Under the pieces are notes generated by a model that did not search any database, had not been told where the DNA came from, and saw only the letters and a list, made by a program, of their open reading frames with translations. Positions 10,536 to 64,000 of a DNA stretch of 64,000 nucleotides are shown here, in pieces; positions within the stretch are counted from its first letter, which is position 1, and the number at the start of each line of letters is the position of its first letter. Origin of the DNA: Auanema rhodensis (Eukaryota; Animalia; Nematoda). The position numbers and the translations under genes are program-made. The stretch lies in the NCBI GenBank assembly GCA_964057225.1, contig OZ059896.1, positions 16,244,001 through 16,308,000 of the forward strand, in the 5' to 3' direction.

Positions 10536-10820
<285 letters not shown>

Positions 10821-16342: not shown

Positions 16343-16685
16343 ATAAAGATTACCTGCGGTCAACCGTGAACAATTTCAAAACCACTATTGAACAAGCATG
16401 GATAGAGCTAGAAAATCTTCGTGAAGGTCTTCGGCCTATCAATTGCATGCAACCTGACTTGGGACCAATTATAACTCTACAAACGAGCGAATTGGAGAAG
16501 AAAAACGCAACACATCCATGATGGAACTATTGGAAGTTAGTACTTGGATTGGAGACGGCTTGGGAATCCCGGGTGCCGTAAGCTTTTTCTTTTTCTCACT
16601 TTCTCATATAGTGTGTAATCAGTAGTTACCTATATGGTATACGGTTATCTGGAAATGTTTTCATTTTCCGAGACAATTCTTAGAC

Positions 16686-16826
16686 AGCTTTGCGCATTGG
16701 CGATAACGTGGCCAATGAGGCTTTGCCGAGGTGCGTTTATTGCTGGTTGAAAACTTTTCCCAATTACCCACGATATTCCCTGAAACATGGGTGATATACG
16801 AAATTTTTGAATGCCTGATAAGGCTG
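16686..16826 (+). ncRNA. U4: U4 snRNA, diverged edge copy
   Basis: Several substitutions relative to the array consensus. Confidence 0.8.
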
Positions 16827-16866
16827 ATTTGCATATTATGGAAGAATGTTCCACGTGAAAAGACGT

Positions 16867-19800
16867 TGTCGCGGTTAGCGACTATTTTTTATCTTTTTTC
16901 TATGTTTTATTCCATTTCAGTTTTGTTTTCATCGTTTTTCTTTTACTTTGTCTATTTCAGATTGTACTTTTCGGCCCGCCTTCATATATCTTCATCTATA
17001 GGATCGAAAAGACAATATACCTCAACCGACTTCAACAGAGTATAGACAATCTATCTTGTGTTGATATTGTTAACTTTCTGTTTAATAAAGCATTCTACCA
17101 CTGATTATTTGTTATTCGATTCTCAGCGGAAATCTATCACACGGAATACCTTCGCCGAAGCGACATTGGTGCATCGACCATTACGACTCAGGTATCTGCT
17201 TCAACAGGTATTTTTACATATAACTTGGTGGCAAATCTTAAGTCTATCAACTCAGACGTGAAATTGTCTGCAGTAACCGAAATATTTCGAAGCATAATAA
17301 CGCTTCAATATACGACAGGTCGTATATTTTTCATTTTACATCTCGTTCATCATTATCAGCTATAGAAGCTTACCGATAACGCCTCATACAGCGTTGGAAA
17401 TTGCATCTTCCTTTGTTAGCTAAATCCGGCAATTATACAATTTCTTATCCGCTCTGCTGAAACGCAAATTTACTCGACAATGAACCCGCTGGGGTTCCTG
17501 ATTCTGAAATTACATACGATAGAATCATTCTGCTTCAATCTACATTACGCAATCACGGATCCGTACTGAAAGATCTCTACAACTCTCGAATCATTGAACA
17601 AAGCCATTCAAAAATTCAAAAATGTTTTTAAAGATTCTGATAAGGAACTACAAGATGAACTGCGAGCATTATGCGCAGAATCGATGAAAATTCAAATAAT
17701 CGTCAAGCTTACGATATTGCTGACGAACAAAGACTATTACTGATTGACCGTATTAATCATATTAAAACAGCAATTGCATTCGTGGAATCACTACTTCCCG
17801 AGAAAAAGAACGAAAAAGTAATCGAAAGCACTGGTACCGAAAGATCACAAATTTATTGCAATTTATTACAATTCTTACAAACAAGCAATCACATTCAACG
17901 TCCGGTAACACAAATACCGACTTTCGATGGTACACCCGAAAATTTCAAACTTTATTGGTCTCGTTTTAATAACATGATACATCAAAATTCACAATATTCC
18001 ATACTTGATAAAGTGAATATTTTACTCGAAGGCTTATCCGATAAAGCTTTAGTCGTTATAAGAGGAATTGAACCTAATGAAAACAACTATCTTAACCACA
18101 AATTTTTTTACAAAGGCTACTTTGCCTAAACTAACCGTTGATTTTCGATGTGCTCATATGGGATCTTGTGATCAAACTTGTGAAACTATGAATCATCGCT
18201 CTCGTATTCCTGAATTCGAACCATATAATTATCCAACACAATCCAAATGTGTCCGGTCTTCAGCACATATATGGCGTTGTTTAACATTTTGGGAAAACCC
18301 TTGTCTTTTCTACAAATTAGAACATGTACCTACTTCGAACAACATATTTGGAATATTTAAATGTGAAGATTGGACAACATCTTCAACTTTTGAAATTATA
18401 ACACATATTGTTAAAGATAAAAATATTTATAATATCACAATACCACCATATTTGAAAATGAATTACTCTTTTTTCAATATGACGATCAATACACAAGACA
18501 AACCTCCTACTCCACTTCATAATTATTATTTTGTTGCTTCAAACAATCAAATCTTTGCTGTTGAACCATATTTTCCATTTATGATACAATGTACTTCGAA
18601 AGCAGACACTTCTTACAATTTTTCAAGATGTACAACGGTTATCGATTGTACTTGTAACAAAATCAATAATGATGTTGTTGGCTGTATATGTCCACAACAT
18701 AATTTCACACATTTTTCTCATATTTTACCTCCGTATATGGCAAATACGGAAACAATCTATAAACCCAATACATCCTTAACTTTTCGAGCCCAGTCTGATG
18801 AAACTACAGTTTCAATTGATTCTGAACTTTTATATGACAGTAATACATTTTCCTATGATATACCTTGTCGTCCCTTATTGATCAGTCTCTCCGGATGTTA
18901 TTCCTGTGGGCAGGGTGCATCTGCATTGTTTTCTTGCATGTCATCTTAAGAAACATGGCTACCTATTGAGTGCTTAAAAGATGTATTTATGATTAAATGT
19001 TCACCTTTCAATGAAATTGCAAATATCAATATTAAAAGAGATAATTCAATTATAAATGAAGTTTGTCATACTAAATGTAATTATGAAAAAATTGATATAA
19101 TTGTAACGGGACAATTATATTTTAATTCATCTGCAAACGAACCATATGAAACTCATTCGAATCAGAATTCAGTAATAATACTTGTGTAGTGACTTGTCAC
19201 TAAGTTAAAATATTACAATTTCAATGAAACTACTTAAAACGCATGAATCATAAAGAACTATATTATTCTTATTCATATCATCTTTCTCACGCTTTAAATA
19301 TTCTTTACAACACAACTAGTATATAAGCTAAAATTGTTATAATGATAACCACAATAAATCTAATCCTATCTTTCTGTGTTAGCTCTTAGTTCACACACTT
19401 GACATAATTCCTTTTTTGAAACTTTTTAAAGAACACCGGATGATGTTTTCAATCTGCATTATTTTTCTGATCCTGATATGTTTTTTGGGGTACCTAGGTT
19501 GTACTCCAGCCATTTCTTTTTTTCTTGATCGCAGTTTTCCGCACTATTAAAATGATAATAGAGATTGCAGCCAAGCTATTCTTCATCCTTAGAAATTTTT
19601 GTTTTGATAGAAGATTCTAATTTGAACTACTTCTGTACTATTCTTAGAAATCACACTATATAAGCATTGTTATCCTCATTTTTCGAAATATTTTGTTGTC
19701 ATGGATTCTGATTCTATTCCAGTTCATAATGAACCATCTTTTGAGGAAGAATTGGAAGATCCTTCCTATTCTAACCTTCCTACCTCTATTCGAACTCTTG

Positions 19801-20482
19801 TTCTCGTTGAAAATCGTTTAAATCGAAAGTTCCAATACATGAGTGAGTATTTGGACAATCACTTCAGAATTATTTCTGAAGCTATGAAAATTCTGAATGA
19901 AACTCAGAATTTAATTCGATTACAAACGCAGCCAACGAAAACTTGCCTATTTTGCGATCAAGTGACTACTGATGGTCACCGCACAGGCAACTGTCCTATC
20001 TATTCATCTGTTATGGAGCGCGGAATCCGCGCTCATCAATTTAAATTATGTTTACGATGTTCATCAGCTCTACACGAGCATCCTTGTAGCACTAACTGCT
20101 ACAAATGCAACTCTGATAAGCATCATGGGTCATTATACGACGGACAACGTCGCAAAAGGCCAATGGCTTAGCTGCGGCGGCAGTGTCGCGGTTAGCGATT
20201 ATTTTTTATCTTTTTTCTATGTTTTGTTCCATTTCAGTTTTGTTTTTATCGTTTTTCTTTTACTTTGTCTATTTCAGATTGTACTTTTCGGCTCGCCTTC
20301 ATATATCTTCATCTATAGGATCGAAAAGACAATATACCTCAACCGACTTCAACGGAGTATAGACAATCTATCTTGTGTTGATATTGTTAACTTTCTGTTT
20401 AATAAAGCATTCTACCACTGATTATTTGTTATTCGATTCTCAGCGGAAATCTACCGCACGGAATACCTTCGCCGAAGCGACA
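16867..20482 (+). mobile_element. Internally deleted BEL/Pao LTR retrotransposon
   Basis: 299-bp LTRs 16867-17165 and 20184-20482 (TG..CA); TSD gacgt/gatgt; PBS TGGTGCATCGACC (tRNA-Gly type); gag fragment 17671-18090 joined to a Gc-like env fragment 18090-19189; zinc-finger ORF 19701-20171. Confidence 0.92.
19701..20171 (+). CDS. BEL 3' accessory ORF: helical region, three Cys/His knuckles, basic C-terminus
   Basis: CLFC..DGHRTGNCP..CLRC..C..CYKC..HHGSL..RRKRP; homologous to 61802-62314. Confidence 0.75.
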   Translation: MDSDSIPVHNEPSFEEELEDPSYSNLPTSIRTLVLVENRLNRKFQYMSEYLDNHFRIISEAMKILNETQNLIRLQTQPTKTCLFCDQVTTDGHRTGNCPIYSSVMERGIRAHQFKLCLRCSSALHEHPCSTNCYKCNSDKHHGSLYDGQRRKRPMA

Positions 20483-20557
20483 GATGTCAATTTTCAAAAT
20501 CAAACTAGAAGGAACGGTTGCACTGCATACATATTCCGAAAAGAAAGGTAAGCATTC

Positions 20558-20668
20558 GCTTACGACGTTGAAAGTACGCCATCCCGTTGGATCTGGCAAG
20601 TCAAGCAACATTTGGCCCGGTTAGTACTTGGATCAGAGACGGTTTGGGAATCTCAGGTGCCGTAAGCT
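20558..20668 (+). pseudogene. 5S rRNA pseudogene
   Basis: 8-nt deletion near the 5' end and multiple substitutions. Confidence 0.85.
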
Positions 20669-20768
20669 TTTTCTTTTCTCATTTTCTCATATAGTTTGTA
20701 ATCAGTAGTTACTTATAGGGTATACGGTTAACTAGAAATGTTTTGATTTTCCGAGACAATTTTTAGAC

Positions 20769-20909
20769 AGCTTTGCGCAGTGGCGATAACGTGACCAATG
20801 AGGCTTTGCCGAGGTGCGTTTATTGCTGGTTGAAAACTTTTCCCAATTACCCGCAATATTCCCTGAAACATGGGTGATATACGCAATTTTTGAATGCCTG
20901 ATAAGGCTG
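20769..20909 (+). ncRNA. U4: U4 snRNA
   Basis: AGCTTTGCGCAGTGGCGATAACG...Sm site AATTTTTG...3' hairpin. Confidence 0.9.
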
Positions 20910-21349: not shown

Positions 21350-23844
21350 CGGGATGCTATTAAAGCTATAAATCTATAGAAGTCAGATATAAGTCGTTAC
21401 ATACCTTGAAGTGCCATCAAAAATATAAATTAAAAAAGCAGAAATTAAAATAAACATACAGTTCTATCAACCAGGCTATCATCGAACAATTTCAAGTCAA
21501 CAGTTACGTGAGTTCATAGTAATAGTTGTTTGTTTATCTTTTTTTTCGATAAATTTGCTTATTCATATTTTCTCATCTTTTATCGTTTTTCCTTCTACTT
21601 TCTGTCCATTTTCTCTGATGATTAACGCTCGGGGTAAATTTGTTCTTGTTTCTCAGCCTTTTGATAATGTTCCTTCGGAGAACATAACTATCTTTTTAAT
21701 AATTCTTCGGTAAATACTCAGAATCTTGAAGTTTATTCAAATGATGTAACTTCACTCTCATTTTTGAATTTCACTCTCCCATCTTTCAATATCCCTCCAT
21801 TGAGGCAGCAAAATGTTAATTTTGCTTCTGCTCTTTCTCTAGCAAATTCATCTGCCGCTTCTTCTTCAGTTGAATCTGTTGCTACAGTTACTGTCCCTAC
21901 TGTCAACAGCGTTTCACTGTTCTCTTCTTCTACTTCACATTTTTCTGTTCAGCCTTCTTCTTCTTCTTCTGCTGTTCATTCTTCACCGTCATCTTCTGTT
22001 TCTTCTTCTCCTTCTTCTGTTTCCTCTCCTTCTTTTCCTGTTCCCTCTCCTTCTTCTTCTGTTCCCTCTCCGTCTTCTTCATTTTCTTCGCAATCTGCAA
22101 ATCCTAACTCTTACGCCGCTCTCATTGCGCCTTCTAAGCAGGGTGTACACCCCTGTTTAGAATATAAATTTGAAAACTTGCTGTATCGCTACCAATTCAG
22201 TAGTAAAAGTTCTCAAAAAGCTTATTCTATTTATCGTTGCACGGGTTGTAAACAGTTGGGTAAATACACTTCTATCAAAGTAGAAAATAATGTATTTCTC
22301 GAAAATCCTTTTGCTCAAAACCATCATTGTGATCCATTTTTGTTTTCTATTAACAAATGCAAAAATATCACATACTCTCTAACTCAGAATATTAAACGTT
22401 CAGACTCATGTTTTGAGATGAAAGCATATTCCTTATTTGTCAATGAAATAAAAAAAATATATCATAAATCTGAGTTAGAAGAGCATGAAAAGCAAGAAGT
22501 TTCCTCTGCCTGGTTCCATGGTGGCTATGATAGTAGACGTAGAGCTATTACAAGGGCTTTAAGTTCTCGTAAAGACTTAAGAATATCCATGACCAATGTT
22601 CCTCTGTCTTTGTCTAAAACTATCAATGGTTGTACGTTCTTGCATTTTCATGACAGCGAGTTTCATTTGTATTTTGATACATTTTGTTTGGAACTAGCTG
22701 TTCAGAATGGTTTAACTCATTTGCTTGGGGACGGTTGTTTCAAATATCAGCCTTTGGATATGGAACAAACATATACCATCATTGGGCGGTTGCAGAAATG
22801 GAACAACTGTACCTCTTTTCTATTCCATTTTAAAAAATAAAAGTAGGTTCACTTATAGAAGGCTTCTTCAACATGTTGTTCTAGCTCTCTCCAACGTTGG
22901 TTGCATAGTTGAAAACCTTATTTTTATCTGTGATTTTCAGATCACTGTAATAAGGGAAGCTGAAACTATTTTTAATTCTGTTCAAGGATGTGCATTTCAT
23001 TATGCTCAAGGCTTGAACAGACGGTTCCTTCAACTGGGTTTGACACAAGCAGAGAAGCAATCCATTGATATCAAACAATCGCATGGTCGGCTGCTGGGCT
23101 TGCTCTTCCTTCAAACTGATCTTATCTCACGGTCCGGGTTACTTAATTCTCCCGTTTCTTCTGATCATCCATCATATTCTTCTTGTCTTCAAATGATCAG
23201 TTATGTGAATGAAACATGGATTGAAGGACCTTTGCGACATTATTGGAGCAAATGGGACATAAAACAGTTTCGTACATCTAATAATGTTGAATCTTTTCAC
23301 CTTAAAATGAAGACTATTTTATCTAGCTCTCATCCTCCTCTTTCTGAATTAATTACTTTTTTTCATGGTGAAAATTTGATGGCTAATCATGTCCTGATCG
23401 CTTTGTCATCGAATGTTGAGCCTGCCAGGAAAAAAAGAAACAGCGTAACTGAGAGGCAACAACGGATTGAGGTTAAGTTTGAAAACTTCAGGAACATCTC
23501 CAATAACCGACTGCCTAATCAGGAGGAAATAATAGCATAAGTCCAGGAGATGGCGAAGTTTAACACCAGAAAATCTTATTTTTAAATCATTTAACTTGAA
23601 AAACTAAACTCTAATAAATTTTTTGAACCATATCTTTTTTAACACAAAAACCTCCTGGCCGTTTAGATTAAGAACCTTGATTTTTTATGAACTGTTTAAG
23701 TTTTTGGGTAATTTTTAGAAGTCTAAACGACCAAAAACTGAGAGTACAACACGTGTGGTATAATTTACGACCGTTAGGCTTGCTGGGGAGAGGTTGTAAA
23801 AATAGGAGACGACGAAACGTCTCAGACCCAGTCAAGGGGTTGTT
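21350..23844 (+). mobile_element. MULE/Mutator-like transposon with frameshifted transposase (ORFs 21764-22840 and 22725-23540)
   Basis: YRCTGC..HHC Zn module; LGDGCFK; FICDF; GCAFHYAQ; TSNNVESFH. Replaces the U4 3' end through the 5S 5' half. Confidence 0.8.
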
Positions 23845-25694: not shown

Positions 25695-25789
25695 ATTTGC
25701 ATATTATGGAAGAATGTTCCACGTGAAAAGACGTCAATTTTCAAAATCAAATGTTCCATACGTGTCCTATAAGTAGAGCGATTGACAAA

Positions 25790-26535: not shown

Positions 26536-26809
26536 CAGTTCTTTGTCTTCCAAGTTTTTAACACGATCTTTCAACGTAGTGCATTCGTTTGTAAGGAATT
26601 CCAACTGCACCACAGTCTTCTTTTGCATTCGTTCGGAGGATTCAAGAGCTTTACTGGCAGCCTCATATTTTATCTGTAAATCATTATTGTCCGCTTCTAG
26701 GGATGCAATCCTATCGGTCAATTCCTGATTTCTTTTCATGAGTGCTTCCATACTTGCTATTGCTTCCTCCATCATCGGATTTATTCGTTCTTATACTTAA
26801 ATTGAAGAA

Positions 26810-29600: not shown

Positions 29601-29602
29601 TA

Positions 29603-52984: not shown

Positions 52985-53052
<68 letters not shown>

Positions 53053-53579: not shown

Positions 53580-56500
53580 ATGTCACTCCTTTTTGTCAAT
53601 CATATCAAACAGTCTAACCAGTTTCTCGGAGAATTACTTACACGATACGAGATGGAAGTGAAGGACCTTCCTGGTATTCTGGTAGATTGCGACTTCCACA
53701 CTGAGGAAGAAGAGGAAACCCTCTCTTGCCTTATCATTCGCTGGACAAAAGTCCAACACCAATTCAAAGAATCGTTGAAAAATCATCAAGATAACGAGAA
53801 AAAATTCCAAAAATTTTACGAAGCATCAGACAAAACGCTTCGTAAAGCATTAGACGAACAGTACATCGCCTTCACATCCGATGAAGACTTTGAACCCAAC
53901 ATTAAAAAGGTTCAAAACGCCATTATTGAGCTTGACGAACACATCATGAAAGCCGAACGCATACTTAGAAAGCTGAGAAAAACGCTTCATAAGAATGAAT
54001 CTGAGCACAACAGCAATCGCTCAACAGAAAACAATGAAACAGAAAACAAATCGAATGATCAATTTCTGGAAATTATCAAGTCATTCCTACACATCCAACA
54101 AACTAGTATCCAAAAACCAGCGATGTCGCTACCTACATTTGATGGCAAACCAGAGAACTTCAAATCATTCTGGGGCCGTTTTGATAGACTTGTTCATGAT
54201 AATGAACAGTTTACAACCTTAGAAAAGGTAAACCTACTCTGTGAAAGCCTCAAAGGCGATTCACAAATAGCAATCAGAGGAATAGAACCCTCTGCTCAAA
54301 ATTATGAGCTTATGCGTGAAGCATTAGTTTCTGAATTTGGAGACTATTCGTCGGATATCAACTCTCTTTTGACACAACTACGTAATTTGAAATTTGCAAG
54401 CAATAATGCAAAAGCATGCAAAGAAACATTTGGAGAAACCAAGGCACTTATCAGGCAAATTGAAGCAGCCGGAGCTACAGTATCCCGCGAAATGTGTACC
54501 GCGATGATTCTCAACAAATTCCCATACCACATCGTGGAAGACATTCTAATTCATCCAAACAACTACCATTCTACTAAAGAAATGCTGACAGCTGTAGACC
54601 ACAAAATCTATTCCTTTTTTCTAAAAGAACAAACAAGAAATAGTCATGAACAAAAGTTTCGAAATCACAAAGACAATGTCACATCTGTTTCACATAAAGA
54701 CAGCACTGCAGAACAACGGAAAACCCAAACTTGGCCATGTGTCTTTTGCGACTCATCCGAGCATCGTTTTTATCAATGCACCACATTTGAAACACCAGAG
54801 AAAAGAAGGTACCGCATTCGCGGAAAGGCCATCTGTTGGATTTGCTTTTCCGATAAACACAAAAGTTCGGAATGCAGAAAACAAAAATGTCGCAATTGCC
54901 AAGGAGATCATAATTCCGCCTTGTGCTCACAAGGAAGAAAAAGTGTACAAAATATCCAAAAAGATAAAGAAACTCCCACATTTAAAAAAGATCAGGCTTT
55001 ACTGATCACCACAGAAGAATTATTGAATAAAAAAACAACAAAATATAAACAAGAATCTGACACTAATAATCGAATCCCTACTGAGGCACTTAATGCACCA
55101 GTATCGCTTAATCACATTGCTGACACACATAATATTGAAGAAAGTCAAGTAATATTACGAACAGCAATGGCGAACATATACAACCACAATAGTAAAAAAT
55201 ATGAGCAAGTACGCATGCTCATAGATGAAGGATCCATGAGATCTTTTATATCCAAGGACCTATCTACAAGATTAGGACTGCCCATTCTTGGTTCTCAGAA
55301 GAGAACCTTTTACGGCATTGGAGCATTATCAGAAACACATGAAGTTGAAGATGTTAAGGTAATTATTGGAACCTCAACTGGATCCCTTATCGTAACAAAA
55401 CTGTTCACAAAACCCATGTTAACCACACCTATACGGTGTCCTAAACTATCTAATGAAGACTTAAAATTCATACAAAGAAGAAAAATTAAATTAGCCAATC
55501 CAAAAACAAACGGAGAATCATTTACTCCGGATATACTGATAGGTATGGATAGATACAAACTATTCATGCACTTAAACGAAGAAACCGAACTCCCCTCACG
55601 TATGAGATTGAAAAACTCGGTATTCGGCCACATGATACATGGGGAAGCTCCTCTTCCCGATGATAATACACAACAAGAAGTAATATTATGCTCTACATTA
55701 GAAGAGATAACAAAAGAAACCTCTCATAAAGAACTCCTCACTAATCTGTTTGAACTGGATTCTATCGGCATCAATACAGAAAATGCCAACGCAGACCGCA
55801 CTATTGATTACTATGAAGAATACTCAAAAGATATAAAAATTGAGAACAACCGTATTATTGCACCGTTCCCGTTAAAAAATAACTTCAAAAATCTCAAAAA
55901 CAACAAAATGCCCGCGTACCATAGATTCGTATCCCTATGGCGAAAGTTACTGCACAATCCAGAAATGCTCTCACACTATACTACAACCATTGAAAGTTAC
56001 CTCAAAGATAACATTGTCGAACAAATTCCCAACAATCACCAGGAGCCTTTAGAGTTTTATATGCCCCACCATGGGGTTTGGAAGCCCAGCAAGGCTAACC
56101 CTCTCAGAATCGTTTTTGACGCCTCCGCTAAACAGAAGGATAGCCCATCGTTGAATGAGATAATACACACAGGACGATCATTTATCACATATATACACGA
56201 CATCATGATCTCCTGCAGAACAAGACCAATAATAATAACATGCGATATTAAAGCCGCATTTCTACAAGTACAATTGACAGAAAATCACAAGAATTTATGC
56301 AAATTCTTTTGGATAAAAAACAAAGAATACCCAATATCACACAATAATATCATAACCCTTCGATTCAACAGATTACCATTCGGTATCACTGCATCCCCCA
56401 GCGTATTGAACATGGGCATAAAATGGTTCTTAGAATCAAAAGTAGACAACCCATTAGCTATGGAAATCCTGCACAACTTATACGTCGACAATATCATTCT

Positions 56501-59500
56501 TACAGCAAATACAACCGAAGAAGCTATAAAGAAATGTAAAGAAACCCAAACACTATTCTCAGAAATAAACATGCATGTTCGCGAATTCTTGTCAAACGAT
56601 GAACAAGTAATACAGAACCTTCCTGAAGAAGACAGATATCCGAACATGACAACCAAAATACTTGGCATATCTTTTAATAAAGAACACGACTCCTTCATTA
56701 TCCCAATAAAAATAACAACGACTCACACAAGTTACACCAAGAGAATTCTACTCAGTCAGTTACATTCAATATTTGATCCCATTGGATTATCAGCACCAAT
56801 ACTGTTACCCCTCAAACTTATCTTGCGAGAAATCATTAGCACAAAATTATCATGGGACCAACCCATTGACTCAAACAGTATCAAGCAATGGGAACAACAT
56901 ATTACTCAGATTAACAATAAGCAATTAACCATGAACAGATATTTTAAGTTTTCTGAACATGAAACACAGTTATGGGTCTTCGCTGACGCAAGCAACCAAG
57001 CAATGGCCGCTTGTTCATATTTCCAAACAAATGGGAAGATTAGTTCTCTGCTAAACGGGAAATCACGCATAGCACCCAAAAATAAAACTACAATTCCACG
57101 ATTAGAGTTACTAGCCATTCGTTTAGCTGTACGAATGGCATTATCTATCGTCACCATATGTCCGAAAATAGCGAAAGTTAACATTGTGAGCGATAGCAAC
57201 ATCGCACTATCATGGATTGTCTCACAAAAATCTCTCCCACTGTTCATTAATAATCAAACAAATACTATAAAGAAACAGCTCAAGCAAATCGAACAAATAT
57301 GTTGCAATATAGAACTATATCACGTACAAACCTCGTTCAACACAGCAGACATCGGATCTCGAGGTGCAGACATGGAAAAACTACAAGTTTCCGACTGGAT
57401 TGAAGGCCCACATTGGTTAACTAAACTTTCCGTGCATAACCCTCTGACATCACTCGGCTCACCTAACAACTCGAGCAGGAATAACGCAGAATTAAAATCG
57501 GAGCATCACAATGTTGTCCACATAATCATAGACAATCCTCCAACCCATGATATTTGGAACATTCGTGAAAACTATGATGACGTGATCAAAACAATGACAA
57601 CCGTAGGGAAATTATTCAAGAAATGGTTTTTCACAGTCCATCCTAACGACGCCAACAAGTTGCAAAAAATAAAACATCTCACATCAACAGACACGCACAC
57701 TGTTGAAGACATCAACATTATTGAAAAAATTTTGATCAGTAACAGTCAATCTAATATGAGCCTTGATGACTTACAGCAAAGACATATAAATCTAAAATTC
57801 TTCAAAGATACATGGGATATTTATCGCGTAAGAAGCCGTTTACAAAATACTCTTCTTCCCGAAGAGACAAAAAACCCTATATTCCTTCTCAAAACAAACC
57901 CCATAGTTAAAAAACTGATCAACAAAATACACAAAGATAATAATCATCAAGGCAAAAATTTCACGCTTATTCAACTCAGACAAAAGTTCTATATACCAAA
58001 AATAACCGGAGTCATTAAGCAAACATTGAAAAACTGTGTGACATGTAAAAGATTTCAATCACACCCTTATGAATTACCAGATATGCCATCGCTACCAAAA
58101 GATAGAACGATTCTTACAAGAGCATTCTTTTCAACAGGGTGTGATCTTATGGGCCCCTTCACCCTTCGAAATGGGTCTAAAGTCCATATCTGTCTGTTTA
58201 CATGCATGACAACTAGAGCAATTCACTTAGAGGTAGTCACCAATCAATCCACAGTTGCTTTTATGAATGCATTCACTAGATTTATATCACGCAGAGGTAC
58301 TCCAGAAATTATACGTAGTGACTGCGCAGGAAACTTTATATTGAGCTCAAAAATATTAGAAACCCTTGAAAAAACATCGGATTACAACGAAAGAAGCTTA
58401 CTAAACACACTAGCACAACAAAAAATTAAATGGATATACAACACTCCATTATCACCCTGGAAAGGTGGATGTTGGGAACGTTTAGTAGGTGTAACCAAAG
58501 CTTCACTCAAAAAATGTTTCATTCCTAGTCGAATGTCCCTGGATGACTTACACACAGCCATTGTAAAAATAGAAGCTATAATTAATACACGCCCACTCAC
58601 CCATCCACACCCAGATAATTTAGATACTCTACCCATAAGGCCAATTGACTTTTTAACATCAGCCATAAAGTTTTCATTACCTGAAAACAACGCGGATACT
58701 CATATATTTGATATCCATAGCGATATTCAAACGATTCAATCAACAGAGCAAGCGCTAGAAGCGCTTCAATTATCAGAAGACTCAGCATCTAAATTTTGGA
58801 AACGATTTCAAGAAGAATATCTAACAAGCTTAAAAGATATATTTAAGCATAAACACCATAGAAAGAATCACACAAACATCTTCCCCCAACCAGATGAAAT
58901 AGTATTGATACAAAACGACATGTTGCCACGAGGAACATGGAAACTAGGTCGCATCATTGAAACAATCACTAGTTCAGATGGCAACATACGTTCAGCAAAA
59001 GTTGCAACAAGCAACGGAAACATAATTATTCGATCCATCAATCAGCTCTATCCACTAGAGATAAGATGCAACACTAACAGCAACAAAATCATAGAAGACA
59101 ACTCACACATAGTTCAAGAAAATAATAGCTCAACAGATAGAACCCCACATACTGATATTGTATTAGACAATATACTTTTCGATCATCCTATAGAACATAC
59201 AGATCAAACAATACATGAGAATAAAGACATAAATGATGTTAGCCATAATTACGATATTGCATATGACTCAGATAACTCTCAACATGATAATACATACACT
59301 CCAGAAACAGAGAATAATGAGGATGCAACAAATGATCGACCTCAAAATAAGACAAAACAATCATCAGTAAAAACAGCAAAACATACAGAACAAGATGATG
59401 TCACTGAGAAGGAAATTATAAAAGCCTTCCCACTAAAAATGTCCTATGCTACACACCAAAGAAAAAATAAAATAAACCCAAAAGTAGCAGCTGACATAAT

Positions 59501-61511
59501 GAAAGCGCTTTCCTTACCGATTATAATTACTTCGACATATGCCGAAGAAATCAATAGTTGCAAGGACTCTAACATGTTCACCACAAAACTTATAGCGAAT
59601 CCTCATTGCTCCCCAGAAATGGCAACATGGACAGTGCTAATAACCATTATGGCAGTTACCCTCATAGTCTCTTGTCTATGCCGCATGGGCTACAGCCAAT
59701 ATAGATATAAGACATGGTCCAAAAACACTCAAACCATGCTCAACATCATGAAATTAAAACATAAAACAATCTCCGAACAAGAAGATCATGAAACTGATCA
59801 AAAAATAACAGAAGACCACAATGATACGTTGCAATTAAAACAAACGAACACACAAGACGCTAATATTGTGGATCATGAAACCTTTCAAAAGCATATTTAC
59901 CCTATTTTAAACCATACGAGAAAGCCACCAAAATTCTCTCTCTTTACTAGAGGGTCGCAAACATCTTTACCATCGTTACTGGCAATCATCTTGGCTTTAT
60001 GTATTGGAAGCTGCAGTTCATGTTCCGATGTTCATGTTCAACACTTCGTTAACATACGATGCGATGACAACTTAGCTTGTTATCACGAATACAGTCAAGA
60101 TATCATATTTTCTCCCGGAACAAAACAATTATGCATTACCATAACGCATTCTAATCATGAAATTGGTCAATTTAAAATAACTAAACTATATACTGAACAT
60201 GTCTGCCAAAAGAATACTAGATACTTCACTAGACAGACAACCGTCAACACATTGAGCATATTACGATGCCGTCACCGGGGCTCGTGTGACGGAACATGTG
60301 AAACTAACTCGCTCCATAATAAAATCGAGGAACTACAACCATATACGTTCCCTTCACAATCAGGTTGCTTCACATCGTCAGCGAGATTTTACACATGTCC
60401 TATGATTTGGACAGATCCTTGTCTTTTCTACAAAATAGAGCATATACCCGTCACTGAGGAAGTATACGAAGTCTATACTTGTGATAGTTGGTCCACCCAA
60501 ACCGTATTTAATATAGAAACAACATTACTCCAGCAGAAAAATAATTACAATATCACTCTACAACCTTACACGAAAAATCGTGAACAACTTTTCAATATAA
60601 CAACGTTATCACAATCACAACCTCCTCCAGAAATGTACACAAAATTATTTTTTTCCTCCAAAGAAAACACGTACATTACGGATATACACACAAAGGGAAT
60701 AATTCAATGTGCAACAGAGGAAGCCGCATTAAAACATTTTAATAACTGTACAGTATCCTCATTCTGCCCTTGCACATTCAATAGATTTGATGAAATAAAA
60801 TGTAGGTGTGATACCCCTACTTTTGAAAAAATGTCCAATACATCAGACATAAAATCTCCTAACCAAAACTTTAAAACTAAAGATAACACGTTATCATTCT
60901 CTACGAATTTAGACGAAAATTTAGTTACGGTCGATTCATCCCTATTCTTAAACTCAGTGATTTTCTCCAACAATTTGCCTTGCGCACCTGCCCTGACAAA
61001 ACTATCAGGTTGCTACTCCTGCGGGCAGGGTGCATTCGCAGAATTCCAATGCCTTACGGCAGAAGAAACATGGATTTCTATCGAATGTCAAAAAGAAGTA
61101 TTCATGATAAAATGCTCTCCAAAAGTAGCAATCACAAAAGTAACAATGAAAAGAGAAAATTCTCAGATTGATGAATTATGCTATACCACATGCGACAATA
61201 AAAAAATTAAGATCATTATTAAAGGAATATTACATCACATAGCAAGCATAGATGAAATAAACGAAAGTGACTCAAGTAAGGGTACAGAATCCAAATCCAT
61301 TGACTTCGCTCCAATCTTCAAGTTAATTTTATCAAAGTTGGGAATCATATTGATAGGCGTTGCAATAACCGCCACCATAGGATATGTGGCATGTACACCC
61401 ATCATGTACTGTGTAGTTTTGAATACAGTCTTAACCACACAATGGATAGCTACCAGGATATTCACACTGTGGATAAAATCAAAAGCCTTATTTCGGGATC
61501 AAAGATTTTAA
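53580..61511 (+). CDS. BEL Gag-PR-RT-RNaseH-IN-Env (phlebovirus Gc-like) polyprotein, 2643 aa
   Basis: Three Cys knuckles; LIDEGS; RIVFDAS; YVDN; FADAS; IN DLMGP/SDCA/GCWER; Cys-rich env CLFY..LSGCYSCGQGA with C-terminal TM. Confidence 0.94.
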   Translation: MSLLFVNHIKQSNQFLGELLTRYEMEVKDLPGILVDCDFHTEEEEETLSCLIIRWTKVQHQFKESLKNHQDNEKKFQKFYEASDKTLRKALDEQYIAFTSDEDFEPNIKKVQNAIIELDEHIMKAERILRKLRKTLHKNESEHNSNRSTENNETENKSNDQFLEIIKSFLHIQQTSIQKPAMSLPTFDGKPENFKSFWGRFDRLVHDNEQFTTLEKVNLLCESLKGDSQIAIRGIEPSAQNYELMREALVSEFGDYSSDINSLLTQLRNLKFASNNAKACKETFGETKALIRQIEAAGATVSREMCTAMILNKFPYHIVEDILIHPNNYHSTKEMLTAVDHKIYSFFLKEQTRNSHEQKFRNHKDNVTSVSHKDSTAEQRKTQTWPCVFCDSSEHRFYQCTTFETPEKRRYRIRGKAICWICFSDKHKSSECRKQKCRNCQGDHNSALCSQGRKSVQNIQKDKETPTFKKDQALLITTEELLNKKTTKYKQESDTNNRIPTEALNAPVSLNHIADTHNIEESQVILRTAMANIYNHNSKKYEQVRMLIDEGSMRSFISKDLSTRLGLPILGSQKRTFYGIGALSETHEVEDVKVIIGTSTGSLIVTKLFTKPMLTTPIRCPKLSNEDLKFIQRRKIKLANPKTNGESFTPDILIGMDRYKLFMHLNEETELPSRMRLKNSVFGHMIHGEAPLPDDNTQQEVILCSTLEEITKETSHKELLTNLFELDSIGINTENANADRTIDYYEEYSKDIKIENNRIIAPFPLKNNFKNLKNNKMPAYHRFVSLWRKLLHNPEMLSHYTTTIESYLKDNIVEQIPNNHQEPLEFYMPHHGVWKPSKANPLRIVFDASAKQKDSPSLNEIIHTGRSFITYIHDIMISCRTRPIIITCDIKAAFLQVQLTENHKNLCKFFWIKNKEYPISHNNIITLRFNRLPFGITASPSVLNMGIKWFLESKVDNPLAMEILHNLYVDNIILTANTTEEAIKKCKETQTLFSEINMHVREFLSNDEQVIQNLPEEDRYPNMTTKILGISFNKEHDSFIIPIKITTTHTSYTKRILLSQLHSIFDPIGLSAPILLPLKLILREIISTKLSWDQPIDSNSIKQWEQHITQINNKQLTMNRYFKFSEHETQLWVFADASNQAMAACSYFQTNGKISSLLNGKSRIAPKNKTTIPRLELLAIRLAVRMALSIVTICPKIAKVNIVSDSNIALSWIVSQKSLPLFINNQTNTIKKQLKQIEQICCNIELYHVQTSFNTADIGSRGADMEKLQVSDWIEGPHWLTKLSVHNPLTSLGSPNNSSRNNAELKSEHHNVVHIIIDNPPTHDIWNIRENYDDVIKTMTTVGKLFKKWFFTVHPNDANKLQKIKHLTSTDTHTVEDINIIEKILISNSQSNMSLDDLQQRHINLKFFKDTWDIYRVRSRLQNTLLPEETKNPIFLLKTNPIVKKLINKIHKDNNHQGKNFTLIQLRQKFYIPKITGVIKQTLKNCVTCKRFQSHPYELPDMPSLPKDRTILTRAFFSTGCDLMGPFTLRNGSKVHICLFTCMTTRAIHLEVVTNQSTVAFMNAFTRFISRRGTPEIIRSDCAGNFILSSKILETLEKTSDYNERSLLNTLAQQKIKWIYNTPLSPWKGGCWERLVGVTKASLKKCFIPSRMSLDDLHTAIVKIEAIINTRPLTHPHPDNLDTLPIRPIDFLTSAIKFSLPENNADTHIFDIHSDIQTIQSTEQALEALQLSEDSASKFWKRFQEEYLTSLKDIFKHKHHRKNHTNIFPQPDEIVLIQNDMLPRGTWKLGRIIETITSSDGNIRSAKVATSNGNIIIRSINQLYPLEIRCNTNSNKIIEDNSHIVQENNSSTDRTPHTDIVLDNILFDHPIEHTDQTIHENKDINDVSHNYDIAYDSDNSQHDNTYTPETENNEDATNDRPQNKTKQSSVKTAKHTEQDDVTEKEIIKAFPLKMSYATHQRKNKINPKVAADIMKALSLPIIITSTYAEEINSCKDSNMFTTKLIANPHCSPEMATWTVLITIMAVTLIVSCLCRMGYSQYRYKTWSKNTQTMLNIMKLKHKTISEQEDHETDQKITEDHNDTLQLKQTNTQDANIVDHETFQKHIYPILNHTRKPPKFSLFTRGSQTSLPSLLAIILALCIGSCSSCSDVHVQHFVNIRCDDNLACYHEYSQDIIFSPGTKQLCITITHSNHEIGQFKITKLYTEHVCQKNTRYFTRQTTVNTLSILRCRHRGSCDGTCETNSLHNKIEELQPYTFPSQSGCFTSSARFYTCPMIWTDPCLFYKIEHIPVTEEVYEVYTCDSWSTQTVFNIETTLLQQKNNYNITLQPYTKNREQLFNITTLSQSQPPPEMYTKLFFSSKENTYITDIHTKGIIQCATEEAALKHFNNCTVSSFCPCTFNRFDEIKCRCDTPTFEKMSNTSDIKSPNQNFKTKDNTLSFSTNLDENLVTVDSSLFLNSVIFSNNLPCAPALTKLSGCYSCGQGAFAEFQCLTAEETWISIECQKEVFMIKCSPKVAITKVTMKRENSQIDELCYTTCDNKKIKIIIKGILHHIASIDEINESDSSKGTESKSIDFAPIFKLILSKLGIILIGVAITATIGYVACTPIMYCVVLNTVLTTQWIATRIFTLWIKSKALFRDQRF

Positions 61512-61801
61512 AAGCATAAGAGAAGAATTTCTTGTGGAGATAAAATTTAAAACTAAAAATTGAAATAATAATGAAACAAAAGAAAAAGAAAGCATTATGT
61601 ACGAATATAACCATTGTAATAAAACAATATCATTGTTTTTCTTTCTTTTCAATTTATGGTAGTATCAAGTTTCTTTTATCAGTTACATAACACATAACCT
61701 TTTGTACAGGCTCTAAAATTCATTGTATCTGTAACAAGATAACCTAAACACACCATTGTACAATAAACTAATAGATGTTAATCAGCGTTTAAAGTCCAGA
61801 T

Positions 61802-62314
61802 GTGAACATGTATATAAGGATGCAGCTCATGTCTTTCCTATATTCCATGAAAATGGAAGATATTGTCTCGAATATAATTGAGAATGCTTCCTTTGAGGAA
61901 GAGCTCAAAAAATATTCCCATCTACCTAACACTGCTGCCAATCTGAGGCAACTAATTGTGCTTGAAAAGAGGCTCTACGAGCACCTAGCTAGCGCGGTGA
62001 ACCATCTATCCGAACGACTGGACAATATTCAACATTCGTTAAATCTGAAACTAGACAATTTGACCATTCAGACTGCTCCTAAAGCTTCATGTGTATTCTG
62101 CAATAAACCGACAGCTGATGGGCACCGTACTGCGGCCTGTCCGATTTATCCTTCCTCACCGGAACGCACTCTCCGTCTTCATGAACTGGGGTTATGCATC
62201 AGATGTTTGAATCAAAAACATCCAGCGATTTGCGAGGTATCCTGCTATAGATGTAAGGCGGATACGCATCATGGAGTGGTTTGTGGTGATATAAAACGTA
62301 AAAGACCTTTGTAG
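61802..62314 (+). CDS. BEL 3' accessory zinc-finger ORF (start possibly a downstream ATG near 61850)
   Basis: CVFC..DGHRT..CP..LCIRC..C...CYRC...HH..VC..KRKRP; conserved in other BEL copies in this window. Confidence 0.78.
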   Translation: MNMYIRMQLMSFLYSMKMEDIVSNIIENASFEEELKKYSHLPNTAANLRQLIVLEKRLYEHLASAVNHLSERLDNIQHSLNLKLDNLTIQTAPKASCVFCNKPTADGHRTAACPIYPSSPERTLRLHELGLCIRCLNQKHPAICEVSCYRCKADTHHGVVCGDIKRKRPL

Positions 62315-62409
62315 GCCTTCTTCTCATTCCCGCATTGCCGGGAGTGTCGCGATAAGCGAGTGAGTTTGTATAAATTTTATCTTCAACAATTGTTTTATTT
62401 GTTTCTCCT

Positions 62410-62465
<56 letters not shown>

Positions 62466-62741
62466 TTCTTCTTTCTTCTAACTTCCTAAGTAATTTTTAT
62501 CCATACCACATGTTGTGTTATACATGTGGCATGACTAATTCTTTGTTTCAGGCTGACGACCGCCCACGAGAAGAGATCAGTCTTACATTTTTCAACGTTC
62601 GCAGTCAGTGATTTTATTCCGTGCTTGTCTTGTTAATTCATCAATAAACCCTTTTCTACATATTCGCTTTGTGTTTTACTTCCAACCATACTATACACTT
62701 GTGGTATAACGCCACAATTCTGAAAAGAAAGGTAAGCATTC

Positions 62742-62860
62742 GCTTACGACCATACCACGTTGAAAATACGCCATCCCGTCCGATCTGGCAAGTCAAGCAA
62801 CGTTGGGCCCGGTTAGTACTTGGATCGGAGACGGCTTGGGAATCCCGGGTGCCGTAAGCT
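62742..62860 (+). rRNA. 5S rRNA
   Basis: Full-length copy. Confidence 0.95.
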
Positions 62861-62961
62861 TTTTCTTTTTCTCACTTTCTCATCTAGTTTGTAATCAGTA
62901 GTTACCTATATGGTATACGGTTATCTGGAAATGTTTTCATTTTCCGAGACAATTCTTAGAC

Positions 62962-63102
62962 AGCTTTGCGCAGTGGCGATAACGTGACCAATGAGGCTTT
63001 GCCGAGGTGCGTTTATTGCTGGTTGAAAACTTTTCCCAATTACCCGCGATATTCCCTGAAACATGGGTGATATACGCAATTTTTGAATGCCTGATAAGGC
63101 TG
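62962..63102 (+). ncRNA. U4: U4 snRNA
   Basis: Consensus copy. Confidence 0.95.
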
Positions 63103-63212
63103 AATGGCATATTATGGAAGAATGTTCCACGTGAAAAGACGTCAATTTTCAAAATCAAACTAAAACGAACGGTTGCACTGCATACATATTCTGAAAAGAA
63201 AGGTAAGCATTC

Positions 63213-63331
63213 GCTTACGACCATACCACGTTGAAAGTACGCCATCCCGTCCGATCTGGCAAGTCAAGCAACGTTGGGCCCGGTTAGTACTTGGATCGGA
63301 GACGGCTTGGGAATCCCGGGTGCCGTAAGCT
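63213..63331 (+). rRNA. 5S rRNA
   Basis: Full-length copy. Confidence 0.95.
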
Positions 63332-63432
63332 TTTTCTTTTTCTCACTTTCTCATCTAGTTTGTAATCAGTAGTTACCTATATGGTATACGGTTATCTGGA
63401 AATGTTTTCATTTTCCGAGACAATTCTTAGAC

Positions 63433-63573
63433 AGCTTTGCGCAGTGGCGATAACGTGACCAATGAGGCTTTGCCGAGGTGCGTTAATTGCTGGTTGAAAA
63501 CTTTTCCCAATTACCCGCGATATTCCCTGAAACATGGGTGATATACGCAATTTTTGAATGCCTGATAAGGCTG
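63433..63573 (+). ncRNA. U4: U4 snRNA
   Basis: One substitution relative to consensus. Confidence 0.92.
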
Positions 63574-63683
63574 AATGGCATATTATGGAAGAATGTTCCA
63601 CGTGAAAAGACGTCAATTTTCAAAATCAAACTAGAACGAACGGTTGCACTGCATACATATTCTGAAAAGAAAGGTAAGCATTC

Positions 63684-63802
63684 GCTTACGACCATACCAC
63701 GTTGAAAGTACGCCATCCCGTCCGATCTGGCAAGTCAAGCAACGTTGGGCCCGGTTAGTACTTGGATCGGAGACGGCTTGGGAATCCCGGGTGCCGTAAG
63801 CT
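63684..63802 (+). rRNA. 5S rRNA
   Basis: Full-length copy. Confidence 0.95.
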
Positions 63803-63903
63803 TTTTCTTTTTCTCACTTTCTCATCTAGTTTGTAATCAGTAGTTACCTATATGGTATACGGTTATCTGGAAATGTTTTCATTTTCCGAGGCAATTCTTA
63901 GAC

Positions 63904-64000
63904 AGCTTTGCGCAGTGGCGATAACGTGACCAATGAGGCTTTGCCGAGGTGCGTTTATTGCTGGTTGAAAACTTTTCCCAATTACCCGCGATATTCCCTG
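63904..64000 (+). ncRNA. U4: U4 snRNA (cut by window end)
   Basis: 5' 97 nt of U4. Confidence 0.9.

What the first reader, a model, noticed from the sequence alone, without database searches (positions are those of the whole stretch)
16536..64000. 5S rRNA and U4 snRNA co-amplified in a 471-bp tandem unit
Seen: every unit has a 119-nt 5S gene followed ~100 bp later by a complete 141-nt U4 (U6-pairing 5' end, kink-turn stem-loop, Sm site, 3' hairpin) on the same strand. There are at least 17 U4 copies in the window and no SL1 leader. Established: many nematodes link 5S with SL1, other animals link it with U1/U2/U5 or histone genes, and U4 is usually low copy. Inference: a lineage-specific Pol III/Pol II linkage that gives a very high U4 dosage under concerted evolution. 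I do not know of a described 5S-U4 array in nematodes.
Basis: partly seen in the sequence, partly recalled or inferred. Interest (0 to 1): 0.78.

Follow-up and report, generated by a model that had tools for sequence, protein, structure and literature searches.

The report
5S rRNA–U4 snRNA repeat, transposon-riddled
A nematode genome carries a 471-bp repeat in which each unit holds one 5S ribosomal RNA gene and one U4 spliceosomal RNA gene; this is a new passenger in a known kind of 5S-linked repeat, and in this window most of the array is broken up by retrovirus-like transposons.

Summary
The core observation holds. Rfam covariance models find 17 U4 hits (85–118 bits, threshold 46) and 13 5S hits, all on the + strand. 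The unit is 471 bp: 5S of 119 nt, a 101-bp spacer, U4 of 139 nt, a 112-bp spacer. No SL1 leader is present.

The stated span is not a continuous array. Only about 7.3 kb (15%) of 16536–64000 is array, in ten blocks. The rest is LTR retroelements and other transposons. Four of 14 5S copies are split by the same LTR.

U4 looks functional in type. It has a full-length model match, compensatory stem changes against other nematode U4s, and a PSE-like bipartite motif at −60 to −42. It has no TATA box and carries a 3'-box-like motif. It is the least variable part of the unit.

The linkage is not unique. Other nematode-type contigs carry 5S with U6+U5+U4, with U4 alone, with U2, with U6+U2, or with U1–U6 plus U3, besides the classic 5S–SL1 unit. 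In Caenorhabditis nigoni and Gnathostoma, U4 is solitary.

I found no published 5S–U4 array. Verdict: real, a new variant of a known kind, of moderate interest. Expression and total copy number are untested.

The parts
62742..63212 (+). Reference 471-bp unit: 5S gene, spacer 1, U4 gene, spacer 2
   Evidence: Other young units are 98–100% identical to it.
62742..62860 (+). 5S rRNA gene (119 nt), followed by a T-run that fits a Pol III terminator. Other intact copies start at 21020, 34854, 46835, 48126, 51998, 52469, 63213 and 63684. A degenerate copy lies at 20552–20668.
   Evidence: RF00001, 92–108 bits against a threshold of 38.
62962..63100 (+). U4 snRNA gene (139 nt). Other full copies start at 16686, 20769, 24005, 25554, 33795, 34603, 35074, 47055, 47875, 48346, 51747, 52218, 52689 and 63433. 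The copy at 21241 is disrupted after 21349. The copy at 63904 is cut by the window end.
   Evidence: RF00015, 109–118 bits against a threshold of 46. Nine of 15 intact full-length copies are identical. Stems covary with other nematode U4s.
62902..62920 (+). PSE-like bipartite motif upstream of U4 (TTACCT, 5 nt, GTATACGG) at −60 to −42. There is no TATA box at −30.
   Evidence: An ACC core sits at the same distance (−57 to −60) upstream of U4, U5, U3 and U2 in C. nigoni, Gnathostoma, L003, L005 and L018. The comparison was made post hoc and is an inference.
63127..63139 (+). 3'-box-like motif (GTGAAAAGACG) about 30 nt downstream of U4, in a low-variation block of spacer 2
   Evidence: C. nigoni has TTGAAAAGATC at a similar distance. 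This is an inference.
16536..16866 (+). Leftmost array remnant. It starts at 5S position 71/72, next to a Tc1/mariner-like element.
16867..20482 (.). Element A: an LTR element with 299-bp LTRs (16867–17165 and 20184–20482, TGTCGCGG…GCGACA). The target-site duplication is GACGT/GATGT at unit position 397–401. It carries Bel/Pao gag and phlebovirus-G2-like fragments.
21350..23844 (.). Foreign insert B. It joins U4 position 109 to 5S position 61 with no target-site duplication. Its ORFs give only weak CCHC and MULE hits.
24324..24659 (.). Older solo LTR of family G at 5S position 64–68, about 92% identical to the young copies. Unassigned DNA follows at 24660–25549.
25752..33645 (.). Composite insert D. 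It holds degenerate Bel/Pao pol (26742–28217 +) and an RdRp-like fragment (25842–26375 −). It joins unit position 418 to 5S position 72.
34102..34445 (.). Solo LTR of family G (344 bp, TGTCGC…GTGACA) inside a 5S gene, with target-site duplication GGGCC (5S 64–68). A second solo copy lies at 47374–47717.
35269..46773 (+). Element E. A 2946-aa ORF (36515–45355) encodes gag, a gB-like stretch, PR, RT, RNase H and IN. It is flanked by about 550-bp inverted repeats (35269–35816 and 46227–46773). The target-site duplication is ATATC at unit position 411–415.
48665..51589 (-). Family G element with both LTRs (48665–48936, truncated, and 51246–51589). Its internal region holds only gag-PR (ORF 48943–50997 −) and pol is deleted. 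It sits at the same 5S 64–68 site.
52920..62716 (+). Element H: an apparently intact Bel/Pao (Atlas-like) endogenous retrovirus. Its LTRs are 52920–53304 and 62345–62716 (97% identical). One 2643-aa ORF (53580–61511) encodes gag-PR-RT-IN and a phlebovirus Gc-like env. The target-site duplication is ATTCT at unit position 447–451, 21–25 bp upstream of the next 5S.

Best explanation
The window shows a stretch of a nematode 5S rDNA array whose repeat unit (471 bp) carries a second, independently transcribed gene: U4 snRNA, on the same strand. This stretch is probably the edge of the array.

Shown: the two genes, their order and spacing, the head-to-tail repetition, and the near-identity of young units.

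Inferred mechanism for 5S: Pol III transcribes it from its internal control region and stops at the T-run right after the gene.

Inferred mechanism for U4: Pol II transcribes it from a SNAPc-type proximal element about 60–42 bp upstream, inside the 101-bp spacer. Its 3' end would be made at a 3'-box-like motif about 30 bp downstream. Read-through from 5S, or Pol III transcription of U4, is unlikely. The T-run after 5S and the T5 run in the Sm site (AATTTTTGA) of U4 would both stop Pol III.

Inferred evolution: because U4 sits inside the 5S unit, it is copied and homogenised with it by unequal crossing-over and gene conversion. That multiplies U4 far above the single-locus state seen in Caenorhabditis nigoni and Gnathostoma. 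The arrangement parallels the classic nematode 5S–SL1 unit, with U4 as the SNAPc-dependent passenger in place of SL1.

In this window the array has been invaded repeatedly by LTR retroelements, with older, more diverged units on the left and near-identical units on the right. This pattern fits an array margin where homogenisation is weak and insertions persist.
For: - **Gene identity:** covariance-model hits for 17 U4 and 13 5S copies, all on the + strand.
- **Repeat structure:** 471-bp period and ten array blocks.
- **Unit content:** nothing else in the unit and no SL1.
- **U4 structure:** 11 of 34 U4 base pairs show compensatory change across nematode-type U4s, including this one.
- **U4 conservation:** it is the least variable segment. 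Per-site difference is 0.13% in young units, against 0.7–3.0% in spacers. In old units it is 1.35%, against 4.7–6.9%. Variable sites number 11 of 139, all singletons, against 31 of 213 in spacers.
- **Promoter:** a bipartite ACC…GTA motif lies at the same distance upstream as in 12 other nematode-type Pol II snRNA or SL genes. There is no TATA box, whereas the U6 genes of L003, L005 and L018 have one at −30.
- **Published promoter form:** the C. elegans PSE is 21 bp, made of two sub-motifs 5 bp apart, and is TATA-less for Pol II (PMC2527325).
- **3' end:** a TGAAAAGA motif is shared downstream with C. nigoni U4.
- **Age gradient:** units left of 30 kb are 94–97% identical to the reference, and those to the right are 98–100%.
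- **Real genomic insertions:** target-site duplications flank elements A, E, G and H.
- **Solitary U4 elsewhere:** L004 (C. nigoni, 20 kb) and L002 (Gnathostoma, 7.7 kb).
Against: - No expression data exist. Neither transcription nor a TMG cap can be tested here.
- Counted as distinct variable sites, the lower variability of U4 is only suggestive (Fisher p = 0.066).
- The PSE-like match is AT-rich and differs from the AACCCG core. It was recognised post hoc.
- Only 15% of the span is array, and 4 of 14 5S genes are broken, so this stretch could be a decaying side-array.
- The source genome was not available. I could not check whether other U4 loci, or the main 5S array, look the same.
Confidence: 0.68

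Rival explanations
1. The window holds a relic or side-array. It would be a silenced, transposon-ridden remnant of a 5S–U4 array lying in heterochromatin. Both gene types would be intact in sequence only because they are still homogenised against a main array, or because decay is recent. Functional 5S and U4 would come from elsewhere.
For: 85% of the span is transposons. Four 5S genes are split by an LTR. The left units are diverged and include a degenerate 5S and a disrupted U4. The flank is full of transposon fragments.
Against: The right-hand units are 99–100% identical to one another and run off the window end as clean tandem copies. Fifteen U4 copies remain intact, nine of them identical. 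U4 varies less than the spacers.
Confidence: 0.2
2. U4 is a hitch-hiking pseudogene. A U4 copy landed in a 5S spacer and is amplified passively, and the working U4 genes are dispersed single copies as in Caenorhabditis.
For: Passive amplification of anything inside an rDNA unit is expected. Expression is untested.
Against: The match is full length at 118 bits, with an intact Sm site, 5' stem-loop and 3' hairpin. Compensatory changes keep the stems. There is no poly(A) tail or retroposition mark at the U4 ends. Promoter-like and 3'-box-like motifs sit in the right places. U4 is the least variable part of the unit. Other nematode-type units also carry U4 with intact promoters.
Confidence: 0.1
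3. The pattern is an assembly artefact, from mis-joined or mis-collapsed repeats.
For: Tandem arrays and nested transposons are hard to assemble.
Against: Every well-defined insertion has matching target-site duplications in array sequence. Units differ by private substitutions. There are no N runs.
Confidence: 0.03

Closest known systems
Caenorhabditis-type 5S rRNA–SL1 RNA tandem unit (about 1 kb, about 110 copies in C. elegans)
   Same: It is a 5S gene (Pol III) sharing one tandem unit with a SNAPc-dependent, Sm-class Pol II small RNA gene, homogenised as a block. The copy number and arrangement are stated in PMC1657053. Five such units were recovered here (L011, L012, L014, L016, L017).
   Different: The passenger is U4, not SL1. 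The unit is half the size (471 bp). The two genes lie on the same strand rather than divergently. No SL1 sequence is present in the window.
5S-linked snRNA units in other nematode-type contigs found here
   Same: The contigs are L005 (5S/U6/U5/U4), L007 (5S/U4), L003 (5S, U2, U1, U5, U6, U4, U3), L015 (5S/U2) and L018 (5S/U6/U2). In each, 5S shares a short contig or unit with spliceosomal snRNA genes. Three include U4, and each snRNA gene has its own PSE-like motif. L005 has an exact 107-bp prefix–suffix overlap, implying a 1306-bp tandem or circular unit.
   Different: These units carry several snRNA genes or a different one. U4 is on the opposite strand to 5S in L005 and L007. None shows the minimal same-strand 5S–U4 pair. 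Their organisms are unknown, since they come from metagenomes or contaminants.
5S rDNA linked to U1, U2 or U5 snRNA or histone genes in crustaceans, molluscs and fishes
   Same: It is the same general phenomenon: a second multigene family embedded in the 5S repeat and evolving in concert with it. This comparison rests on my own knowledge. Vierna et al. 2013 (Heredity 111:410), as I recall its abstract, reports 5S linked to various ncRNA genes in several clades. That paper could not be read here.
   Different: The phylum and the passenger differ. I know of no U4 case, and ten full-text searches found none.
Perkinsus marinus SL RNA–U2–U4 clusters
   Same: U4 is amplified as part of a small-RNA gene cluster (PMC3101222).
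   Different: It is a protist, the partner is SL RNA rather than 5S, and it is unrelated by descent.
Atlas virus and other nematode Bel/Pao endogenous retroviruses with phlebovirus-like Gc (for element H)
   Same: H has LTRs, a single gag-pol-env reading frame and Peptidase_A17/DUF1759/DUF5641 domains. Its Gc-like env matches PDB 7A4A at E = 5e-21 (PMC9094657).
   Different: H is only about 40% identical in pol to the nearest database relatives. Here it sits inside the 5S–U4 array.

Membership tests
U4 spliceosomal snRNA (Rfam RF00015) | Covariance-model score above the curated threshold over the full model | tested here: met
   Fifteen full-length copies score 109.5–117.9 bits against a threshold of 46, covering model positions 1–138.
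U4 spliceosomal snRNA (Rfam RF00015) | U6-pairing 5' region, 5' stem-loop, Sm site and 3' hairpin, with base pairs kept by compensatory change | tested here: met
   The model alignment shows all four elements, including AAUUUUUGA. Eleven of 34 pairs have double changes across 8 U4s, including the central stem of the window copy.
U4 spliceosomal snRNA (Rfam RF00015) | Expressed, TMG-capped and assembled with U6 | not testable with these tools
   No RNA data are available, and no U6 gene lies in the window.
SNAPc-dependent Pol II snRNA gene (nematode type) | Bipartite PSE about 65–40 bp upstream and no TATA box at −30 | tested here: inconclusive
   The window has TTACCT-N5-GTATACGG at −60 to −42. 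The ACC core sits at the same offset as in 12 comparison genes, and there is no TATA box. The sequence departs from the AACCCG core, and the comparison was post hoc. The PSE form is taken from PMC2527325.
SNAPc-dependent Pol II snRNA gene (nematode type) | 3' box downstream of the coding region | tested here: inconclusive
   GTGAAAAGACG lies about 30 nt downstream. C. nigoni U4 has TTGAAAAGATC. Only two sequences share the motif.
5S rRNA gene (Rfam RF00001), Pol III type 1 | Model score above threshold and a T-run terminator directly downstream | tested here: met
   Nine copies score 92–108 bits against a threshold of 38. TTTTTCTTTTTC follows the gene.
Composite 5S rDNA tandem repeat carrying a second small-RNA gene (5S–SL1 kind) | Head-to-tail repetition of a unit that holds both genes | tested here: met
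   TRF finds a 471-bp period at 98–99% match in three blocks. blastn maps all blocks in register.
Composite 5S rDNA tandem repeat carrying a second small-RNA gene (5S–SL1 kind) | Concerted evolution, with spacers as well as genes near-identical among units | tested here: met
   Young units are 98–100% identical, spacers included.
Composite 5S rDNA tandem repeat carrying a second small-RNA gene (5S–SL1 kind) | It is the main, high-copy 5S locus of the genome | not testable with these tools
   Only 64 kb is available. The array runs off the window at 64000.
Bel/Pao (Belpaoviridae, Atlas-like) endogenous retrovirus (element H) | LTRs with TG…CA ends and a 5-bp target duplication, gag-PR(A17)-RT-IN, and a class II Gc-like env | tested here: met

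The most novel reading that the evidence does not exclude
In nematodes the 5S rDNA repeat may be a general amplification platform for SNAPc-dependent small-RNA genes, with passengers swapped between lineages. The passengers seen here are SL1, U4, U2, U6+U2, U6+U5+U4, and the full U1–U6 plus U3 set. On this reading the recurrence reflects a functional benefit of sharing one Pol II/Pol III transcription compartment, not chance hitch-hiking. The 471-bp 5S–U4 unit would be its minimal form. It would be the sole or main source of U4 in this species.
Probability: 0.3. Interest if true: 0.65.

Novelty: new variant of a known kind. Interest (0 to 1): 0.45.

Why it matters
5S–SL1 linkage is a textbook feature of nematode genomes. 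Recent C. elegans work treats that cluster as a model for how Pol II and Pol III share one nuclear compartment (PMC11822377 and bioRxiv 10.64898/2026.01.07.698080, listed).

A natural unit in which U4 replaces SL1, together with units carrying other snRNA sets, gives a comparative test. It can show whether the partner of 5S must be a SNAPc-dependent gene, and whether copy number of a core spliceosomal RNA can be set by rDNA dynamics.

There are two practical points. Such arrays collapse in short-read assemblies. They also generate spurious 'hypothetical proteins' that are antisense to U4.

The finding does not change any established mechanism. It adds a new passenger and a wider pattern.

Tried and rejected
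- **Species identification failed.** No exact-protein record exists for the 2643-aa ORF or for the antisense ORFs. The best retroelement relatives are only about 40% identical.
- **Word search with the 684-aa gag-PR protein** returned nothing at E ≤ 1e-10.
- **DNA scans with a U4 26-mer.** The metagenome scan gave one solitary, non-nematode-like U4 (L001). The viral scan gave none and the prokaryote-genome scan gave none. The metagenome scan missed L003, although that contig holds the 26-mer, so these collections are incomplete.
- **Viral-contig scan with element H pol** found nothing.
- **Papers not held.** Vierna et al. 2013 and Liu, Blaxter & Shi 1996 are the two papers most likely to mention such units, and neither is held. 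'Not described' therefore rests on ten full-text searches plus my own knowledge.
- **A site-specific non-LTR element at 5S position 72** was considered and rejected. The sequences left of 16536, 23845 and 33646 share nothing.
- **Retroposed U4** was rejected: there is no poly(A) tail or target duplication at the U4 ends.
- A script with typed upstream sequences came back unrun. I repeated the step by reading the files by reference.

Full report
**What is in the sequence**

Rfam covariance models find 17 U4 matches and 13 5S matches between 16536 and 64000, all on the + strand. Fifteen U4 copies are full length at 109.5–117.9 bits, against a curated threshold of 46. One more, at 21241–21378, scores 89 bits because foreign DNA replaces its 3' part after 21349. 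The last is cut by the window end.

TRF and blastn give a 471-bp unit. In the reference unit (62742–63212) the 5S gene is 119 nt and is followed at once by a T-run. A 101-bp spacer follows, then U4 (139 nt by the model), then a 112-bp spacer. A permissive Rfam scan of two units finds nothing else. The SL1 22-mer is absent from the whole window even with three mismatches.

Unit-homologous DNA occupies only ten blocks, totalling about 7.3 kb, or 15% of the stated span. The rest is mobile DNA:

- **Element H (52920–62716)** has 385-bp LTRs, a 5-bp target duplication (ATTCT) and one 2643-aa frame with Bel/Pao gag, protease, RT and integrase. Its phlebovirus Gc-like envelope matches the Atlas virus Gc structure 7A4A (PMC9094657).
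- **Element E (35269–46773)** has a 2946-aa gag–PR–RT–RNase H–integrase frame with a weak herpesvirus gB-like stretch. Unexpectedly, it is bounded by about 550-bp inverted repeats rather than direct ones, with a 5-bp duplication.
- **Element A (16867–20482)** is a deleted Bel/Pao-like element with 299-bp LTRs.
- **Family G** is a 344-bp LTR (TGTCGC…GTGACA) that sits in four 5S genes at exactly position 64–68, with duplication GGGCC. Three are solo LTRs. The fourth is a 2.9-kb element that keeps only gag-PR.

As a result, 4 of 14 5S copies are broken, while 15 U4 copies are intact.

Units left of 30 kb are 94–97% identical to the reference, and those on the right are 98–100% identical. DNA to the left of 16536 is AT-rich with transposon fragments. 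The picture fits the margin of an array that continues beyond 64000, but this cannot be checked.

**Is U4 a working gene?**

The model alignment shows the U6-pairing 5' end, the 5' stem-loop, the Sm site and the 3' hairpin. I aligned the window U4 with U4 from Caenorhabditis nigoni, Gnathostoma spinigerum and five environmental contigs. Eleven of 34 predicted pairs keep pairing through double changes, including the central stem of the window copy.

Nine of the 15 intact full-length copies are identical. Per-site difference from the reference is lowest in U4, at 0.13% in young units and 1.35% in old units. Spacers show 0.7–3.0% and 4.7–6.9% respectively. Counted as distinct variable sites, the contrast is 11 of 139 (all singletons) against 31 of 213. 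That gives p = 0.066, which is suggestive and not decisive.

**Promoter and 3' end signals**

Upstream of U4 the window has TTACCT, five bases, then GTATACGG at −60 to −42. An ACC-centred box followed about 11 nt later by a GTA-type box sits at the same distance before other genes:

- U4 of C. nigoni, Gnathostoma, L003 and L005
- U5, U3, U2 and U1 of L003
- U2 of L018
- SL1 of the Caenorhabditis-type units

This matches the published description of the C. elegans PSE as two sub-motifs 5 bp apart, TATA-less for Pol II (PMC2527325). The window U4 has no TATA box at −30, while the U6 genes of L003, L005 and L018 do. The window motif is an AT-rich departure from the AACCCG core, and I recognised it after seeing the others, so I rate it as supportive only.

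Downstream, GTGAAAAGACG lies about 30 nt past the gene, in a low-variation block. C. nigoni has TTGAAAAGATC at a similar distance. The T5 run inside the Sm site and the T-run after 5S argue against Pol III transcription of U4 and against a 5S–U4 co-transcript. That argument rests on established Pol III termination rules.

**Relatives elsewhere**

No eukaryote genome collection was available, so I used two indirect routes.

First route. A spurious 102-aa ORF runs antisense through 5S(1–33), spacer 2 and U4. Used as a protein query, it retrieved 14 equally spurious ORFs antisense to U4 in other organisms. Their contigs gave the following results:

| Contig | Source | Content |
|---|---|---|
| L004 | C. 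nigoni, 20 kb | solitary U4 among protein-coding genes |
| L002 | Gnathostoma, 7.7 kb | solitary U4 |
| L005 | metagenome, 1413 bp | 5S(+), U6(−), U5(−), U4(−), 5S(+); 1306-bp tandem or circular unit |
| L007 | metagenome | 5S and U4, convergent |
| L003 | metagenome, 2.6 kb | 5S, U2, U1, U5, U6, U4, U3, all on one strand |
| L006, L008–L010 | metagenome, short | U4 only |

The 1306-bp unit of L005 is inferred from an exact 107-bp overlap between its two ends.

Second route. I scanned prokaryote genome assemblies with a nematode 5S 23-mer. This returned nine contaminant contigs:

- five Caenorhabditis-type 5S–SL1 units
- L015, with 5S+U2; its 5S is 95% identical to the window's, the closest found
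- L018, with 5S+U6+U2
- two 5S-only units with a 461-bp period

The U4 and 5S sequences of these contigs are of nematode type. U4 is 82–94% identical among them and 70% identical to the outgroup L001.

Linking 5S to snRNA genes, U4 included, is therefore recurrent in nematode-type genomes. The minimal same-strand 5S–U4 unit was seen only in this window.

**Literature**

Ten full-text searches found no 5S–U4 unit in nematodes or in any other taxon. The nearest items are SL–U2–U4 clusters in Perkinsus (PMC3101222) and fish cytogenetic maps of U4. Two relevant papers could not be read: Vierna et al. 2013, and Liu, Blaxter & Shi 1996.

**Verdict**

The finding is real. It is best read as a composite 5S–U4 repeat that works like the 5S–SL1 unit with a different SNAPc-dependent passenger, seen here in a transposon-invaded stretch. 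It is a new variant of a known kind. High U4 dosage, expression and the status of this stretch as the main locus remain untested.

Noticed in passing
window 24324–24659, 34102–34445, 47374–47717, 48665–51589: The same Bel/Pao-type LTR (344 bp) sits at exactly 5S position 64–68 (duplication GGGCC, inside the internal control region) in four 5S genes. Three are solo LTRs and one is an element with both LTRs but only gag-PR. The young copies are near-identical, and their flanking units are duplicated too. One insertion spread by unit duplication therefore seems more likely than site-specific integration, but the latter is not excluded.
   Followed up: partly
window junctions at unit positions 397–401 (16866/16867), 411–415 (35268/35269), 418 (25751/25752), 447–451 (52919/52920): Three of the four insertions with verified target duplications (A, E, H), plus the left end of insert D, lie in the 112-bp spacer 20–75 bp upstream of a 5S gene. 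None lies in the 5S-to-U4 spacer. The chance of 3 or more of 4 falling there is about 0.04. This hints at integration aimed upstream of Pol III genes, as in yeast Ty1/Ty3 or Dictyostelium TRE elements (comparison from my own knowledge), or at selection. The sample is too small to decide.
   Followed up: partly
window 16536, 23845, 33646 and the G sites: Four kinds of breakpoint with unrelated partner sequences fall within 5S positions 61–72. They are the Tc1/mariner-like flank, insert B, insert D and the G LTR. Either this is a local hotspot or the other three are remnants of rearrangements at the G site. It is unexplained.
   Followed up: partly
window 35269–46773: An 11.5-kb retroelement has an uninterrupted 2946-aa gag/gB-like/PR/RT/RNase H/DDE-integrase frame and a 5-bp target duplication. 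Its termini are about 550-bp inverted repeats (GTTCCATATTGG… / …CCAATATGGAAC). It has no direct LTRs and no obvious primer-binding site. Inverted termini are known for DIRS elements, which use a tyrosine recombinase. I know of no such case for an element with a DDE integrase.
   Followed up: partly
window 52920–62716: An apparently intact Atlas-like endogenous retrovirus has a single 2643-aa gag-pol-env frame, LTRs 97% identical, and an env matching PDB 7A4A at E = 5e-21. It is only about 40% identical in pol to the nearest database relatives (Ancylostoma, Haemonchus, Necator).
   Followed up: partly
window 25842–26375 (− strand); 29603–30724 (+ strand): A 176-aa ORF matches Pfam RdRP_4 (23.3 bits, threshold 22) and shows the SG..T..N and GDD polymerase motifs. 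It may be a fragment of an endogenous RNA-virus element. An ORF 3 kb away on the other strand has a weak Peptidase_S39 hit (E = 0.004). No further pieces were found.
   Followed up: partly
L003 1–2602 (JGI metagenome 3300051518, Ga0503115_025643): 5S, U2, U1, U5, U6, U4 and U3 all lie on one strand within 2.6 kb of a nematode-type contig, each with its own PSE-like box. It is a near-complete small-RNA 'supercluster'. No SL1 is present.
   Followed up: partly
L005 (1306-bp unit), L015, L018, L019/L013: Other nematode-type 5S units carry U6+U5+U4, U2, U6+U2, or nothing (461-bp period). Several were found as contaminant contigs inside bacterial genome assemblies and MAGs.
   Followed up: partly
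window 52193–52501 (− strand) and equivalents; proteins P0121, P0131, P0134: A 102-aa ORF runs antisense through U4 and the start of 5S. Database 'hypothetical proteins' of Caenorhabditis nigoni, Gnathostoma spinigerum and Heterorhabditis bacteriophora align to it only over the U4-antisense part. They are therefore probably mis-called genes lying over U4.
   Followed up: yes
window 1–16535: The flank has 23–33% G+C, with long (AG)n/(GA)n runs, a perfect 25-bp × 2.8 tandem repeat at 12097–12166, integrase fragments (13518–14284), a Tc1/mariner-like transposase (15425–16342) abutting the array, and a short ORF (9821–10048) that looks like a membrane-receptor exon. No host gene was identified.
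   Followed up: partly
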